From Salpingoeca rosetta (taxonomy: Eukaryota > Protista > Choanoflagellata), in the NCBI GenBank assembly GCA_033442325.1, contig JAWQFM010000013.1:1086885-1150884 (forward strand): a DNA stretch of 64,000 bases, written 5' to 3'. The notes under the pieces were generated by a model, which did no database searches, was not told where the DNA came from, and worked only from the letters and a program-made list of their open reading frames with translations. Numbering within the stretch: position 1 is the stretch's first letter; every line of letters begins with the position of its first letter. Positions 1 through 9,347 of the stretch are shown here, in pieces. Made by a program: the position numbers and the translations under genes.

Positions 1-3195
<3,195 letters not shown>

Positions 3196-3700
3196 GACGA
3201 GATGACCGCTTGTTCGTTCGTGTGTGTCGTGTGTATGTGAGTGAGTGTATCTTTAGTATCTTTGTGAGAGTGTTTGTGTTTGTTTGGTCGCCGTCTTGGT
3301 CGTTGCCGATCAACAGGGTTCAAGGGAGCGGGAAGGAAGAGCACAAGCAAACAAATGAAAGAGGCTCGTCTCTCAAACAAGCAAGCACACACACTCTCTT
3401 TGCCTTTTCCGCAAACACACAGAACAAAGAACAAAGACCACACTCATCGCGTGTGCAAATCGCACAAGCGCACTTCCTTGCCGCGCTTGTTGACATTGTT
3501 GTTTTGCACCCCTCAACACACACACACAACACACGCTGAGCCTACATGGGCAAGGGCCAAAGGTTTGAGGCGACGCGAAGCGGGGCATACCACGCGTTCT
3601 CGGGACGCGCTCGGGACGTTCGATTTCAAGGTTCGCACGAAACGAAAAAACCGCCGGCGTTTTGCATTTCAATCATATGTGGTGTCGTGAGCGGTGGGTG

Positions 3701-3721
3701 TTTTGGCGGGAAACGTTCAAA
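3701..3721. promoter_or_regulatory. Candidate E2F site with adjacent CHR-like element
   Basis: TTTTGGCGGGAAA (reverse complement TTTCCCGCCAAAA, E2F consensus) is followed 2 nt later by TTCAAA (fits the TTYRAA LIN54/CHR-type motif). It lies in the divergent intergenic region just upstream of the M1AP-like gene. Confidence 0.45.
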
Positions 3722-3893
3722 CAGGGTGCTTTGCAGTCGTGGCGCTCTTGCTTCTTGATGGTGGTGCTGTGAGTTGTACACCTCTACACCTTGTACACAC
3801 CTTGTACACACCTTGTACACCTTGTACACCTGTGTCTGCCTTTGCAATGCTCGCTGCTTTCTTGCTTTGCAGCTCAGTTTGTGTTGACATGAG

Positions 3894-4750
3894 ATGGCTT
3901 TCACACGTGTTAAAGCACTTTTAACCTCACCAACAAGATTGCTTGTTGTTCTCGACCTTAATGTGTCATCATCATGGCATCTGCTCGCACAGTTGTGTTT
4001 GTGTCCTCCCCATTGCAGCAGCAGACATCGGCTGCGTGGTTTGTGCAGGCGCTTGCAGAGCTCAAGAACGTCATCAAGCTCCACGCATGGTGGCAGAGCG
4101 CCTGTTTTTGGCAGTTCTCCTCAAACGGCAAAACAAGCACGTGCGTGTGGACAGAGAGGGAGAGAGAGAGTGTGTGTGTGGGCGTGTGTGTGAGAGTGTG
4201 TGCGTGTGTGAGCGTGTGTGCGTGTGTGAGAGTGTGTGAGCGTGTGTGCGTGTGTGAGAGTGTGTGCGTGAGGGTGCGAGAGAGAGAGACAGAGTGTGTG
4301 AGAGTGCGTGCGTGTGTGCGTGTGATGGCTGCTTGCTTGCTTGCGTGGATCATGTGGGCGACGGCGCAGCCGTGCACGTGAGAATGTGTGTTGTGTGTTG
4401 ATTCCAATCAAGGAATGCAGCAAAGATGTGCCTTTCCACCCGCTTTGCTCACCGAGTCAAGCCCTCTCCCCCCTTCTCTTTCCCTGTCGGCCACGTTGCT
4501 GCGCAGCGGTTGGTTGTCATCTGACGAAGCTGTCGATGTGCTGACGCGCATCACAGAACTCGATCACAGCAGCTGGGCACACTTTCCCGCGCTTCACACA
4601 TCGCCAACTCTTGTTCCTGCATCCATCGAGGCGTTTAGCAAGTGCGTGCTCCTATCAGACTTGTGTTGCCATTGCACACCTGTTTGCAAATCCACTCCTG
4701 TTCCCCAGGCATACGCTGCTCTCGGATTCAGCAACAAAAGAATCCCCAGT

Positions 4751-4798
<48 letters not shown>

Positions 4799-5005
4799 GT
4801 ACTTCCGTACTACCCTACCACCTCTTCATTGATAACTTCTTCCGCGACACATTTGCACAGCTTGTACGTGTTTGCAGACACTCTTCAGCAGCATGTACAA
4901 CAAGTTGCTTCGAGTGCGCTAACGGCTCTGGAGTAAGTGCCGACGTGGTGCTCGCCTTCGTCCTGTGCAGTGTCACGAATTGTTCCCATCCCTCATCCCC
5001 CCTAA

Positions 5006-5100
<95 letters not shown>

Positions 5101-7394
5101 GAGCCGGAGCAGAGCGAGCTGGTGCTGCTCCATGCTGAAGGCTCAAACGTGGCTGCGCTGATTGCGGAGGATGCTGGTGGTACTGGTATGGACACGGACG
5201 GAGACTTGACGCTCCCAGAGGACTTTGCGGTCAAGCACGTCGCCGCGTCCAGACACACGCTCAGCATGTTCTTTCGGCAGTGGTGGCAGCCATCGTCGGC
5301 GCTGGCCCACCGCCAGGCCTGTATCACCCTTGCCAACGAGGTTCAGGTCCAATGCGACCTCCAGCCAGTCGTGTTGGATCCGGTCGCCAACATCCCGGGC
5401 CCATATGGCGCCCACTTCCAGGTTTGCCAGTCGTGTATGTGTGTGTGTGTGTGTGTACTCACATGTACATGTGTGTGTGTGTGTACATGTGTACATGTGT
5501 ACATGTGTACATGCGAGTGCAAGCCATGAAGCAAGCATGCAGCACCCCTATTTGCACACCCAGACTCTGCTCACGGTGTGCACGCCTTCACGTGACCCCC
5601 ACACCTCCTGTCACCCCTCTCAAACACGCAAATGCTGCGTGCCAGTTGTCCATGAAACCGCGCCGCATGCGCGCGCACGCGCTCGTGGATGACGCGGCTG
5701 CAAGCGAGCCGGCCGACCTCCAGTTTGTGGCGCGTGCACAGGTCGCCAGCGTCACCTCCGCCTTGGTTGGTGTTGTTGTTGTGGTTGGCTGGACTCCACT
5801 GCTGCTCGTGCTGTCCTCCCCTCTTGCCGTTCTCTCTCGCTGCGTCTTGATGTGCCTACGTGCAAGCCGCACACCATTTCCGTGCCGACTCACATCAACA
5901 CACCGGCCGCAGCTGTTTGGGACCACATTTATCCTGAAGCCCACAACCCTCCCCAGCCTCTCGTGGGTGAAGCTGAAGGAGCACAGCCAGCGCTTTGAGG
6001 CTCTCGCCCGCAGGCTGCAAACAGAAGTGAGTCGGGTGCAAATAGAAGACGCTGGTCGGTGGCGCACGGCGCTTGTCACGCTCTGTCACCATCATCCAAC
6101 GCCATGCAGGCACATTTGCGTCGGCACCCCATCCAAACATGCTCACATTATGCATCCGCCTTTCATCCACTACAGGGCACAAAGCTGGTGTTGGAGAAGC
6201 AGTGCGACTTTGGTCTTGCATCCTACTTTGTCGTGTTCCCTGCCGTCGAACCGTCACACCTGTCGTCATCATCGCAGCCACCCCCGCCGGTGCTCTGGCT
6301 CAAGGTGTCGTGAGCGCTCATGTGTTGTGTGCGTGTGTGTTGTGTGCGAGTGTGTCGTGTGCGTGTGTGTCGTGAGCGCTCATATGTGTGTGTGTGTTGT
6401 GTTGCGTGCGTGTGTGTTGTGTTGTGTGTGTGTGTGCGTGCGTGTATGTTGTGTGTTGTGTATGTTGTGTGTTGTTTGGTGTCTCTCTGCTTGCGTGTGT
6501 TGTGTGCATGCCTGCCCATCCTTGTACTTGCCTGACTTCCTGCCTTCCTGCGTCTCGCCAAACTAATCTCCACCCTCACCCTTTGACCAACTCCCACAAG
6601 GCCGTGGCTAGCCGGGAGCTGATGAACCACGTAGACACGGCATGGGGCATTGATCCAACCGACACACAGCAGCAACAGGACACGGCCATCGCCTCAGCCA
6701 TACACACCGCTCTCACAGAGGTGATGACAGTGGTGTTGGAATCGCGTGTCGGATGTTTTCACACGCAATTCGTAACGCTTTGTATTTCAACACACACACA
6801 CACACACATGGACGTGCAGGTGCCGAGCCTCGGACGGTTCAACCCGCTTGACTTTGAGTCGCACCTGTTTGCGGCGCTGCCGTCTGGTCCGCGGAGGTCG
6901 AGTGGGCACGCAAGCACAGCGAAGCGGCGAAGCGACGATCACGCCAACCACAGCAGCGTCGACCACGACATCTCTGTCAGCGGCAGCACAGACAGCACAA
7001 CCACCACCAGTAGCAGCAAGGGCGGCGGTGGCAGTGGCAGGAGTGGCCACAGCGCCAGCAGTAGCAAGGCCCAGTCATCGTCGTCATCATCACGCGCAGT
7101 ACCGTCCCAGCGCCGCAGCCGCCGCACGCGCAGATCAAAGAGGTTGGAAGTGTGTGCGTGTGTGTGTATGTGTGTGTGAAAATGTGTGAGTGAGTGTGTG
7201 CGTGTGTGTGTGTGTGCGTGTGTGTGTGTGTGTGCGTGTTGTGTGTGCGTGTGTGTGTTGTGAAGTTCCTTTCGCTTGTGTGCTGGTCACTGTGCTTGAC
7301 GCATGCACCTCTCGCCCCCCCCTCATACCCTGCCTCTCTCCACCTCAGTGCCAAGCAGACCATGCTTCCTTTCCTGGACTCAACCGCGCTGTGA
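3894..7394 (+). CDS. M1AP: Meiosis 1 arrest protein (M1AP) homologue, multi-exon; start may be 3758
   Basis: Spliced blocks PTRLLVVLDL, TLSMFFRQWW, VQCDLQPVVLDP, LFGTTFILKPTTLPSLSWVKLKEHSQRFEALARRL, LWLK|AVASRELM and FNPLDFESHLF are collinear with human M1AP blocks as I recall them: PPRLLIVHI, SMEIFFKAWL, LKCDLQERLLCP, YGLPFILRPTSCWQLDWDELETNQQHFHALCHSL, LLVKAVATRELM, YNPLHVQSHLY. The last exon ends QTMLPFLDSTAL* at 7394. Confidence 0.85.
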
Positions 7395-7843: not shown

Positions 7844-8958
7844 TTATGACGCGTTGTCGCCAAAGCGACGAAGGCACTGCTTGATGGCAGCGCTGCGGGA
7901 AGCGGAGGCCGACGCCAGCGCGCGCTTGATCTGCGTATCCAAGGGGTCGCCCGTGCTGTACCCAAACTGGTACATGTACGAGTCTGGGTTGACGCGCTCA
8001 GCGTCCTCCTGCGTAAGGCCCACGTCGGTGCCCCACCACCCGCCAGGGAAGAAGTAGAAGGTCGGGAACACCGTCTTGGGCACGCCGCGCAGTGCAGCGG
8101 TGGCAAAGTCTGGCCCCGTCGCCTCCCAGCGGGCCACACCCTGTGTGAAGCGGAGGTCCCGGTACACGCGGCCCAGCGTGCGGACCACGTGCGCCATCGC
8201 GGGGTGGTGCTGTGCGCACCCAATAACACCCACCGCCAGGATGGGCGTGACCGTGCTCGGCGCCGTCATCTTGCCTGGCCGCACCTCCTCACCGAAGAAG
8301 AGCCCTGTCTGTGACGCCTGCTGTAGCAGCGGATCCAGCGACTTGCCGTTGATCCACATGCTGTCTGCGTCGATGAAGACGCCCCCATACCGATATAAGA
8401 TCTCGTAGCGGGCAATGTCTGCCTTGTTTGCCGGGTGCGGCTCCAGTGCGAAGATGTCGCTGTTCTCCAGGTGTAGCGCCTCAATGTCCTCCGTGCGCCA
8501 CAGCCGGTATGTCCACTCCGGGTTGGCTTGAACATAATCGTGCATCCACGCCGCCATCCACTGGCACGGCGCCTGGTTGTTGCCCAGCCAGATCTGGTGG
8601 ATCGTCTTCGGGATCGTCGTGTCTGCAGCGGCGTTGTGTGTGTGTGTGTGTGTGTGTGTGCGCGTGTGTGTGTACGGATGAGGTAAAGGCGAGGGCAACC
8701 GCAGGGATGGAAGAAGGGTGAGTAGCAGATGGAGAGATGAAGCTCGGCAGTGCGGGAAAAGACGGAGGCAGACGCAAGAACAGATCAGTCACGCACACAC
8801 ACACACAGACAGACACAGCAGGAAGAGACACATAGACACACAGACACACACACACACACAGACACACACACACACACAGACACAGACACACACACACACA
8901 CAGACAGACACAGCAGGAAGAGACACATAGACACACAGACACACACACACACACACAG

Positions 8959-9028
<70 letters not shown>

Positions 9029-9347
9029 AGACACAGACAGACACAGACAGACACAGACACACACGCACACACGCACACATCCACACACACACATCCACAC
9101 ACACACNNNNNNNNNNNNNNNNNNNNNNNNNNNNNNNNNNNNNNNNNNNNNNNNNNNNNNNNNNNNNNNNNNNNNNNNNNNNNNNNNNNNNNNNNNNNNN
9201 NNNNNNGTCATCGTTGTTGTTGCTGACGCGAGTTTTTGCGGACGTTGCAAACAGCCAACAACAGCAAGAACCACAGCAAAGCAACAGCGTTGCCACCACA
9301 CGCACACGCACACTGGTGTTGTTGTTCCCCACTTTCCACGTCGTCAT
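7844..9347 (-). CDS. DXD-motif glycosyltransferase (GT32-type, Och1/Sur1/A4GALT-like), type II membrane protein
   Basis: Exon 1 from ATG 9347 carries a hydrophobic anchor ([20 protein letters not shown]) and runs into an N gap. The catalytic exon ~8623-7844 has [42 protein letters not shown] and ATGP. Confidence 0.88.

What the first reader, a model, noticed from the sequence alone, without database searches (positions are those of the whole stretch)
3894..7394. M1AP (meiosis 1 arrest protein) homologue in an apparent unicellular holozoan
Six collinear motif blocks match mammalian M1AP along its length. M1AP is known from mammalian male meiosis, where it is associated with the SHOC1-TEX11-SPO16 (ZZS) crossover pathway, and it is not part of the usual protist meiotic toolkit lists. 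An intact orthologue here would mean that M1AP, and possibly a ZZS-M1AP crossover module, predates animals. It would also provide a marker for sex in this organism.
Basis: partly seen in the sequence, partly recalled or inferred. Interest (0 to 1): 0.72.

Follow-up and report, generated by a model that had tools for sequence, protein, structure and literature searches.

The report
Choanoflagellate M1AP gene, Ku-like fold
This intact ten-exon gene of the choanoflagellate Salpingoeca rosetta is a true relative of animal M1AP, a Ku-shaped helper of meiotic crossing-over that the literature calls vertebrate-only, so the protein is older than animals, although its meiotic role here is still unproven.

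Summary
The window is Salpingoeca rosetta. The gene is the public model PTSG_05644, labelled "hypothetical protein" (515 aa). It maps exactly onto the + strand as 10 exons with GT-AG introns, from 3974 to 7394.

A full HMMER search of 1.84 billion proteins gave only nine hits. They are itself, choanoflagellate relatives, unnamed entries, and animal proteins named "meiosis 1 arrest protein-like" that carry Pfam M1AP_N.

- **Profile comparison:** 99.2% probability, E 3e-19, over residues 171-415.
- **Reciprocal search:** the animal profile hits only this locus in the genome.
- **Introns:** two positions and phases are shared exactly with a cnidarian and an annelid gene, and a third lies within one column.
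- **Fold:** the core domain folds as a Ku beta-barrel, and its nearest predicted structure is chordate M1AP.

An exact E2F-type 12-mer lies 272 bp upstream of the start. The genome holds 72 copies, and one sits at the DMC1-like promoter. The relative also has E2F-type sites upstream.

Verdict: a new member of a known family, of moderate interest.

The parts
3702..3713 (+). Exact E2F-type site (TTTGGCGGGAAA), 272 bp upstream of the start codon
   Evidence: 3 matches in the window against 0.07 expected; 72 copies in the genome against 2 for the reversed control, one of them at the DMC1-like promoter. The wild relative has E2F-type sites 170-235 bp upstream of its ATG.
3894..3973 (+).
   Evidence: The wild relative has no ATG here. 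Its protein starts at the position that matches 3974.
3974..4140 (+). Exon 1 (residues 1-55, phase-2 donor); start of the vWA-like N-domain
   Evidence: Exact mapping of P0001. The relative keeps the start and the same phase-2 intron.
4507..4641 (+). Exon 2 (residues 56-100)
4861..4932 (+). Exon 3 (residues 101-124)
5100..5421 (+). Exon 4 (residues 125-232): end of the vWA-like domain and first strands of the Ku-like barrel, with two conserved blocks
   Evidence: 45% identical in the wild relative.
5646..5765 (+). Exon 5 (residues 233-272): basic loop kept among choanoflagellates, at the place of the low-confidence barrel insertion
5913..6026 (+). Exon 6 (residues 273-310): the most conserved M1AP block
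   Evidence: It is the only hit of the animal M1AP profile in the whole genome. The intron after it is shared with Hydractinia and Owenia.
6176..6304 (+). Exon 7 (residues 311-353): barrel strands
6601..6720 (+). Exon 8 (residues 354-393): conserved block and helix
   Evidence: The intron after it is shared with Hydractinia and Owenia.
6820..7142 (+). Exon 9 (residues 394-500): last conserved block (to about 6891), then a Ser/Arg-rich disordered tail
7349..7394 (+). Exon 10 (residues 501-515 and the stop codon)

Best explanation
The locus is the Salpingoeca rosetta orthologue of animal M1AP. It encodes a non-enzymatic, Ku-shaped adaptor with four parts: an N-terminal vWA-like domain, a Ku-type beta-barrel core, a short helical arm, and a disordered Ser/Arg-rich tail. 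Shown here: gene structure, homology, fold, shared introns, and the promoter site. Inferred: it is switched on through the E2F-type site together with recombination genes such as the DMC1-like gene. As in mouse and human, it would then dock on the ZIP4/TEX11 scaffold of the ZZS complex and stabilise recombination intermediates, so that class I crossovers form during the meiosis that follows mating. I put family membership at about 0.9 and the meiotic ZZS-helper role at about 0.45.
For: - Identity with PTSG_05644, and exact 10-exon GT-AG mapping.
- phmmer against 1.84 billion representatives gave nine hits. The named ones are 'meiosis 1 arrest protein-like' from Hydractinia and Corticium. Those two and the Owenia protein carry PF28287 M1AP_N.
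- hhalign of choanoflagellates against animals: 99.2%, E 3.1e-19.
- The animal profile hits only exon 6 of this gene in the genome.
- Intron positions at alignment columns 441 and 539 (phase 0) are shared with Hydractinia and Owenia. A third is at 347 against 346. By my arithmetic, fewer than 0.1 coincidences are expected.
- The AF2 domain model (core pLDDT 80-92) matches Ku70/80, bacterial Ku and INTS13-INTS14 in the PDB, E about 5e-6. Its best Atlas structural match is chordate M1AP, TM 0.52. The top language-model hits are also chordate M1AP.
- Human M1AP is described as a fourth Ku paralogue (PMC11377751) and binds ZZS proteins (PMC12162868).
- Conservation in S. infusionum (a transcript) and in a Tara Oceans relative.
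- The E2F-type site.
Against:
- The S. infusionum homologue comes from an ordinary culture transcriptome, so expression may not be restricted to meiosis.
- No ZZS partner was verified.
- Several residues that are invariant in animals are replaced in the most conserved block.
- The N-terminal third does not align significantly.
- The E2F-type motif also sits at a non-meiotic Tho1/SARNP-like gene, so it does not mark meiosis.
- No vertebrate sequence was compared directly.
Confidence: 0.6

Rival explanations
1. It is a true M1AP-family protein, but in choanoflagellates it serves general DNA repair or S-phase chromosome work under E2F control. The meiotic, ZZS-linked role would have arisen later, in animals or vertebrates.
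For: The E2F-type motif is shared with non-meiotic genes, and earlier notes place it at S-phase genes. The S. infusionum homologue was recovered from a standard culture transcriptome. The Ku-like fold suggests nucleic-acid or repair-complex binding in general (PMC11377751).
Against: In mammals M1AP is nearly testis-specific and its loss gives meiotic defects only (PMC12162868). The same exact 12-mer sits at the DMC1-like promoter.
Confidence: 0.3
2. It is not M1AP but a fast-evolving copy of another Ku-fold protein (INTS13, INTS14 or a third Ku) that resembles M1AP by shared fold.
For: The Atlas feature search also lists INTS13, INTS14 and Ku clusters at 0.90-0.93. Pfam searches for INTS13 and INTS14 found no other locus in the genome, although the controls did not ring either.
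Against: Every named sequence hit is M1AP-like, and none is Ku or Integrator. P0001 has no Pfam hit to Ku, VWA_2, IntS14 or Mat89Bb even at E 10. Two separate Ku loci exist elsewhere. Introns are shared with animal M1AP genes. Chordate M1AP outranks Ku by structure.
Confidence: 0.05
3. It is a decaying or silent gene model without function.
For: No RNA evidence was obtained. There is a low-complexity tail and microsatellite-filled introns.
Against: The 515-codon frame across 10 exons is intact, with canonical splice sites. Exons are conserved at 40-45% amino-acid identity in a wild relative whose promoter and introns no longer align. Several probable RNA assemblies hold about the exonic share of its words (a guess by the tool).
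Confidence: 0.05

Closest known systems
Animal M1AP (meiosis 1 arrest/associated protein; Pfam PF28287 M1AP_N), partner of SHOC1-TEX11-SPO16
   Same: Length (515 aa against 525-561 aa), collinear conserved blocks over residues 171-415, Ku-like core fold, a disordered C-terminal tail, and two to three shared intron positions.
   Different: Only 19-22% overall identity. Several residues that are invariant in animals are replaced in the central block. The N-terminal domain was not shown to match M1AP_N. There is a choanoflagellate-specific basic loop in exon 5. Partner binding and meiotic expression are untested.
Ku70/Ku80 and bacterial Ku (Pfam PF02735)
   Same: vWA-like N-domain plus beta-barrel core. 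Foldseek E about 5e-6 and probability 1.00 to many Ku chains.
   Different: No sequence-level Ku match. Genuine Ku loci lie on other contigs. No evidence of a DNA-encircling dimer: the homodimer prediction gave no verdict.
INTS13-INTS14 Integrator module (PDB 6sn1, 8pk5)
   Same: The same Ku-like two-domain architecture used as a protein scaffold rather than for DNA end binding (PMC7347597).
   Different: No Pfam match to Mat89Bb or the IntS14 domains. Lower structural rank than Ku and M1AP.

Membership tests
M1AP | Significant sequence similarity to accepted M1AP proteins | tested here: met
   phmmer hits to Hydractinia and Corticium 'meiosis 1 arrest protein-like' and to the Owenia protein, all carrying PF28287. 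hhalign 99.2%, E 3.1e-19.
M1AP | Match to Pfam PF28287 (M1AP_N) in the N-terminal domain | not testable with these tools
   The model is absent from the local Pfam copy. hhalign did not extend into residues 1-170. That part is vWA-like by Atlas leads only.
M1AP | Reciprocal best hit within the genome | tested here: met
   The profile of six animal M1AP-like proteins gives a single hit in the 55 Mb genome, at window 5913-6047, which is exon 6.
M1AP | Gene structure shared with animal M1AP genes | tested here: met
   Phase-0 introns at alignment columns 441 and 539 occur in S. rosetta, Hydractinia and Owenia. A further one is at 347 against 346.
M1AP | Ku-like core fold, closest to M1AP models | tested here: met
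   The model is of moderate confidence only (mean pLDDT 60, core 80-92).
M1AP | Direct alignment to a vertebrate M1AP sequence | not tested
   No vertebrate sequence was available from any tool. There are only cluster-level matches to chordate M1AP.
M1AP | Binding to TEX11/ZIP4 and the ZZS complex | not testable with these tools
   No verified partner sequence was in hand. The ZIP4-like neighbour of the DMC1-like gene shows only weak TPR hits.
M1AP | Meiosis- or germline-restricted expression | not tested
Ku (PF02735) | Sequence match to the Ku core profile | tested here: not met
   No Pfam hit at E up to 10. The genome's Ku hits lie on contigs C6 and C22.
Ku (PF02735) | Ring-forming dimer | tested here: inconclusive
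   The homodimer prediction of residues 165-417 gave no verdict.

The most novel reading that the evidence does not exclude
M1AP arose as a fourth Ku-type paralogue before choanoflagellates and animals split. It may be much older, because an unnamed plant protein cluster is the next-nearest match by both features and shape. In the common ancestor it already worked with ZIP4/SHOC1/SPO16 as a crossover module, wired to the same E2F-type promoter switch as DMC1 and other meiotic genes.
Probability: 0.35. Interest if true: 0.68.

Novelty: new member of a known kind. Interest (0 to 1): 0.52.

Why it matters
[quoted passage not shown] Here the family is found in sponge, cnidarian and annelid genomes and in at least three choanoflagellate lineages. 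That removes the argument that it is younger. S. rosetta has inducible mating, crosses and genome editing. A human infertility gene with an unclear mechanism therefore gains a simple haploid-diploid model. Earlier notes of this scan describe TERB1/2-, SPO11-, DMC1-, ZIP4- and SPO16-like genes in the same genome. Taken with those, this finding suggests that much of the "animal" meiotic prophase machinery predates animals.

Tried and rejected
The wild relative starts at the ATG that matches 3974, reads straight through, and lacks the upstream ATG.
- **Pfam on single exons and on P0001.** Nothing.
- **PDB sequence searches.** Nothing.
- **Word-index protein searches with P0001 and P0010.** Only self hits.
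- **PF28287.** Absent from the local library.
- **Read laying.** Afterwards I sent no reference spanning those places to any search tool. Local scripts read window.fa only to map exons, and the BLAST step used the pieces beside them.
- **Joining exons.** The full-length protein used is the public record P0001.
- **Full-length AF2 model.** Too poor to use (pLDDT 38.6).
- **Homodimer prediction.** No verdict.
- **Genome searches for SPO22, DUF5587, IntS14 and Mat89Bb.** These gave only generic TPR proteins or nothing, and they are not evidence of absence in this intron-rich genome.
- **Wild relative, after residue 273.** No exons could be found on its contig.
- **Levin and King 2013.** Not held in the library.

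Full report
**What is there.** The stretch is eukaryotic. It has about 55% G+C and short exons, separated by introns filled with GT/CA microsatellites. A word-index search with a stop-free frame over exons 5-6 returned one protein, P0001. This is Salpingoeca rosetta PTSG_05644, "hypothetical protein", 515 aa.

A splice-aware exact mapping places P0001 on the + strand as ten exons: 3974-4140, 4507-4641, 4861-4932, 5100-5421, 5646-5765, 5913-6026, 6176-6304, 6601-6720, 6820-7142 and 7349-7394. All nine introns are GT-AG, and the coding sequence is 1548 nt. The window is contig C13:1086885-1150884 of that genome. The full-length sequence used throughout is the public record.

**Where the gene starts.** I first built a model that spliced 3894-3962 to 4019. 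Tara Oceans metagenome contigs from a wild relative (L012, L013) settle the question:
- The relative's protein begins at the position that matches 3974.
- It reads through the stretch that my model treated as an intron.
- It ends its first exon at the same phase-2 position.
- It has no ATG where S. rosetta has 3889/3894.

So 3894 is an upstream ATG in the leader.

**Is it M1AP?** Local Pfam gives nothing for the exons or for P0001. The M1AP_N model PF28287 is not in the local copy. A full HMMER search with residues 1-417 against 1.84 billion representatives gave only nine hits at E below 0.001:
- P0001 itself.
- A fragment from the wild relative.
- The Salpingoeca infusionum transcript (E 6.6e-12).
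- Six further proteins.

Among those six, the cluster look-up names Hydractinia and Corticium "meiosis 1 arrest protein-like" and an Owenia protein. All three carry PF28287 in the collection's precomputed Pfam hits. No Ku, Integrator or other family appears.

Further tests agree:
- BLASTP against the sponge protein gives E 1e-14 over 240 residues.
- A profile of the two choanoflagellates against a profile of six animal proteins gives 99.2% probability, E 3.1e-19, over residues 171-415.
Several residues that are invariant in animals are replaced in S. rosetta.
- In the reverse direction, the animal profile searched over the whole 55 Mb genome hits one place only, window 5913-6047, which is exon 6.

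**Independent evidence from gene structure.** I mapped the Hydractinia and Owenia proteins onto their own loci and projected intron positions onto alignment A1.
- S. rosetta introns fall at columns 94, 144, 183, 347, 403, 441, 499, 539 and 687.
- Hydractinia and Owenia both have phase-0 introns at exactly 441 and 539, and one at 346.
- In the well-aligned part, three of the four Hydractinia introns therefore coincide with S. rosetta introns.
- By my own arithmetic, about 0.03-0.08 exact coincidences are expected by chance.
- The sponge gene could not be mapped by my script.

**Fold.**
- The full-length AlphaFold2 model was unusable (pLDDT 38.6).
- A model of residues 165-417 with a 12-row alignment reached mean pLDDT 60, with 80-92 in the barrel strands.
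- Foldseek against the PDB returned only Ku70/80, bacterial Ku and INTS13-INTS14 in its top 50, with E from 5e-6 and probability 1.00.
- The Atlas shape search ranked a chordate M1AP cluster first (TM 0.52, 159 residues, rmsd 3.7). An unnamed plant cluster came next, then Ku clusters.
- The language-model search of the whole protein gave the same order.
- Residues 1-170 alone look like vWA domains of Ku_N, INTS13 and related proteins. This is a lead, not a test.

This matches the published description of human M1AP as a fourth Ku paralogue with vWA, Ku core and Ku_C parts (PMC11377751). Real Ku genes lie on contigs C6 and C22.

**Regulation.** An exact TTTGGCGGGAAA lies at 3702-3713, 272 bp upstream of the start codon.
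- The genome holds 72 copies, against 2 for the reversed control.
I confirmed the sites and the layout, but not the DMC1 or ZIP4 identities.
- The wild relative has E2F-type sites 170-235 bp upstream of its start, although the promoters otherwise do not align.
- The other exact copy in this window sits at a Tho1/SARNP-like gene. The motif therefore marks a cell-cycle type regulon, not meiosis as such.

**What could not be shown.**
I worked beside those places afterwards. Several assemblies that the tool guesses to be RNA hold 0.34-0.40 of the words, roughly the exonic share, but none is on record as RNA.
- *ZZS partners.* Pfam SPO22 found only generic TPR_12 proteins, and DUF5587 found nothing. 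Earlier scan notes on ZIP4-, SPO16- and SHOC1-like genes remain leads.
- *Dimer.* A homodimer prediction gave no verdict.

[quoted passage not shown] I found no paper that reports M1AP outside vertebrates. The public record calls this gene hypothetical.

**Verdict.** This is a genuine, intact, conserved choanoflagellate member of the M1AP family with a Ku-like core, at about 0.9 probability. The role as a ZZS-associated crossover helper is inferred from mammals and from the shared promoter motif, at about 0.45. The main rival is a more general repair or S-phase role.

Noticed in passing
window 3889-4193: Upstream ATGs at 3889 and 3894 open reading frames in the leader. The 3894 frame runs 99 codons and overlaps the real start at 3974. 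If the transcript starts upstream of them, they could dampen translation. The wild relative lacks them.
   Followed up: partly
window 34438-34449 (- strand), genes about 33897-35082 (-): The second exact E2F-type 12-mer of the window lies at a gene with Tho1/MOS11 C-terminal domains (SARNP-like). This shows that the motif is not confined to meiotic genes.
   Followed up: partly
Atlas clusters; no locus: An unnamed cluster of about 635-aa land-plant proteins is the nearest neighbour after chordate M1AP, ahead of Ku, by both language-model features and shape. It may be a plant M1AP-type Ku paralogue. No sequence id was available to test this.
   Followed up: no
window 5646-5700 (residues 233-250): A basic loop in exon 5 is nearly identical in the Tara relative, and it is basic in S. 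infusionum and in an unnamed metagenome fragment, but not in animals. It lies in the low-confidence insertion of the barrel. It could be a nuclear localisation signal or a nucleic-acid contact.
   Followed up: no
L012, L013 and six further loci (Tara Oceans and other marine metagenomes): A wild marine relative of S. rosetta carries this gene on at least 45 assembly blocks. It is useful for comparing promoters and exons across this genome.
   Followed up: partly
window 7844-8698 (- strand): A single-exon 284-aa reading frame with a DXD sugar-binding glycosyltransferase domain (Gly_transf_sug) lies tail-to-tail with the M1AP-like gene.
   Followed up: partly
window 1900-3195 (- strand): A 431-aa Ser/Asp-rich reading frame with no Pfam match lies head-to-head with the M1AP-like gene, about 780 bp from its start. 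The E2F-type site could serve both genes.
   Followed up: no
window 3646-3662: A near-palindromic GC core flanked by A and T runs lies 40 bp upstream of the E2F-type site. Its meaning is unknown.
   Followed up: no
window about 9100-9200: A reading frame on the - strand translates through a run of X, so the assembly has a gap of N here.
   Followed up: no
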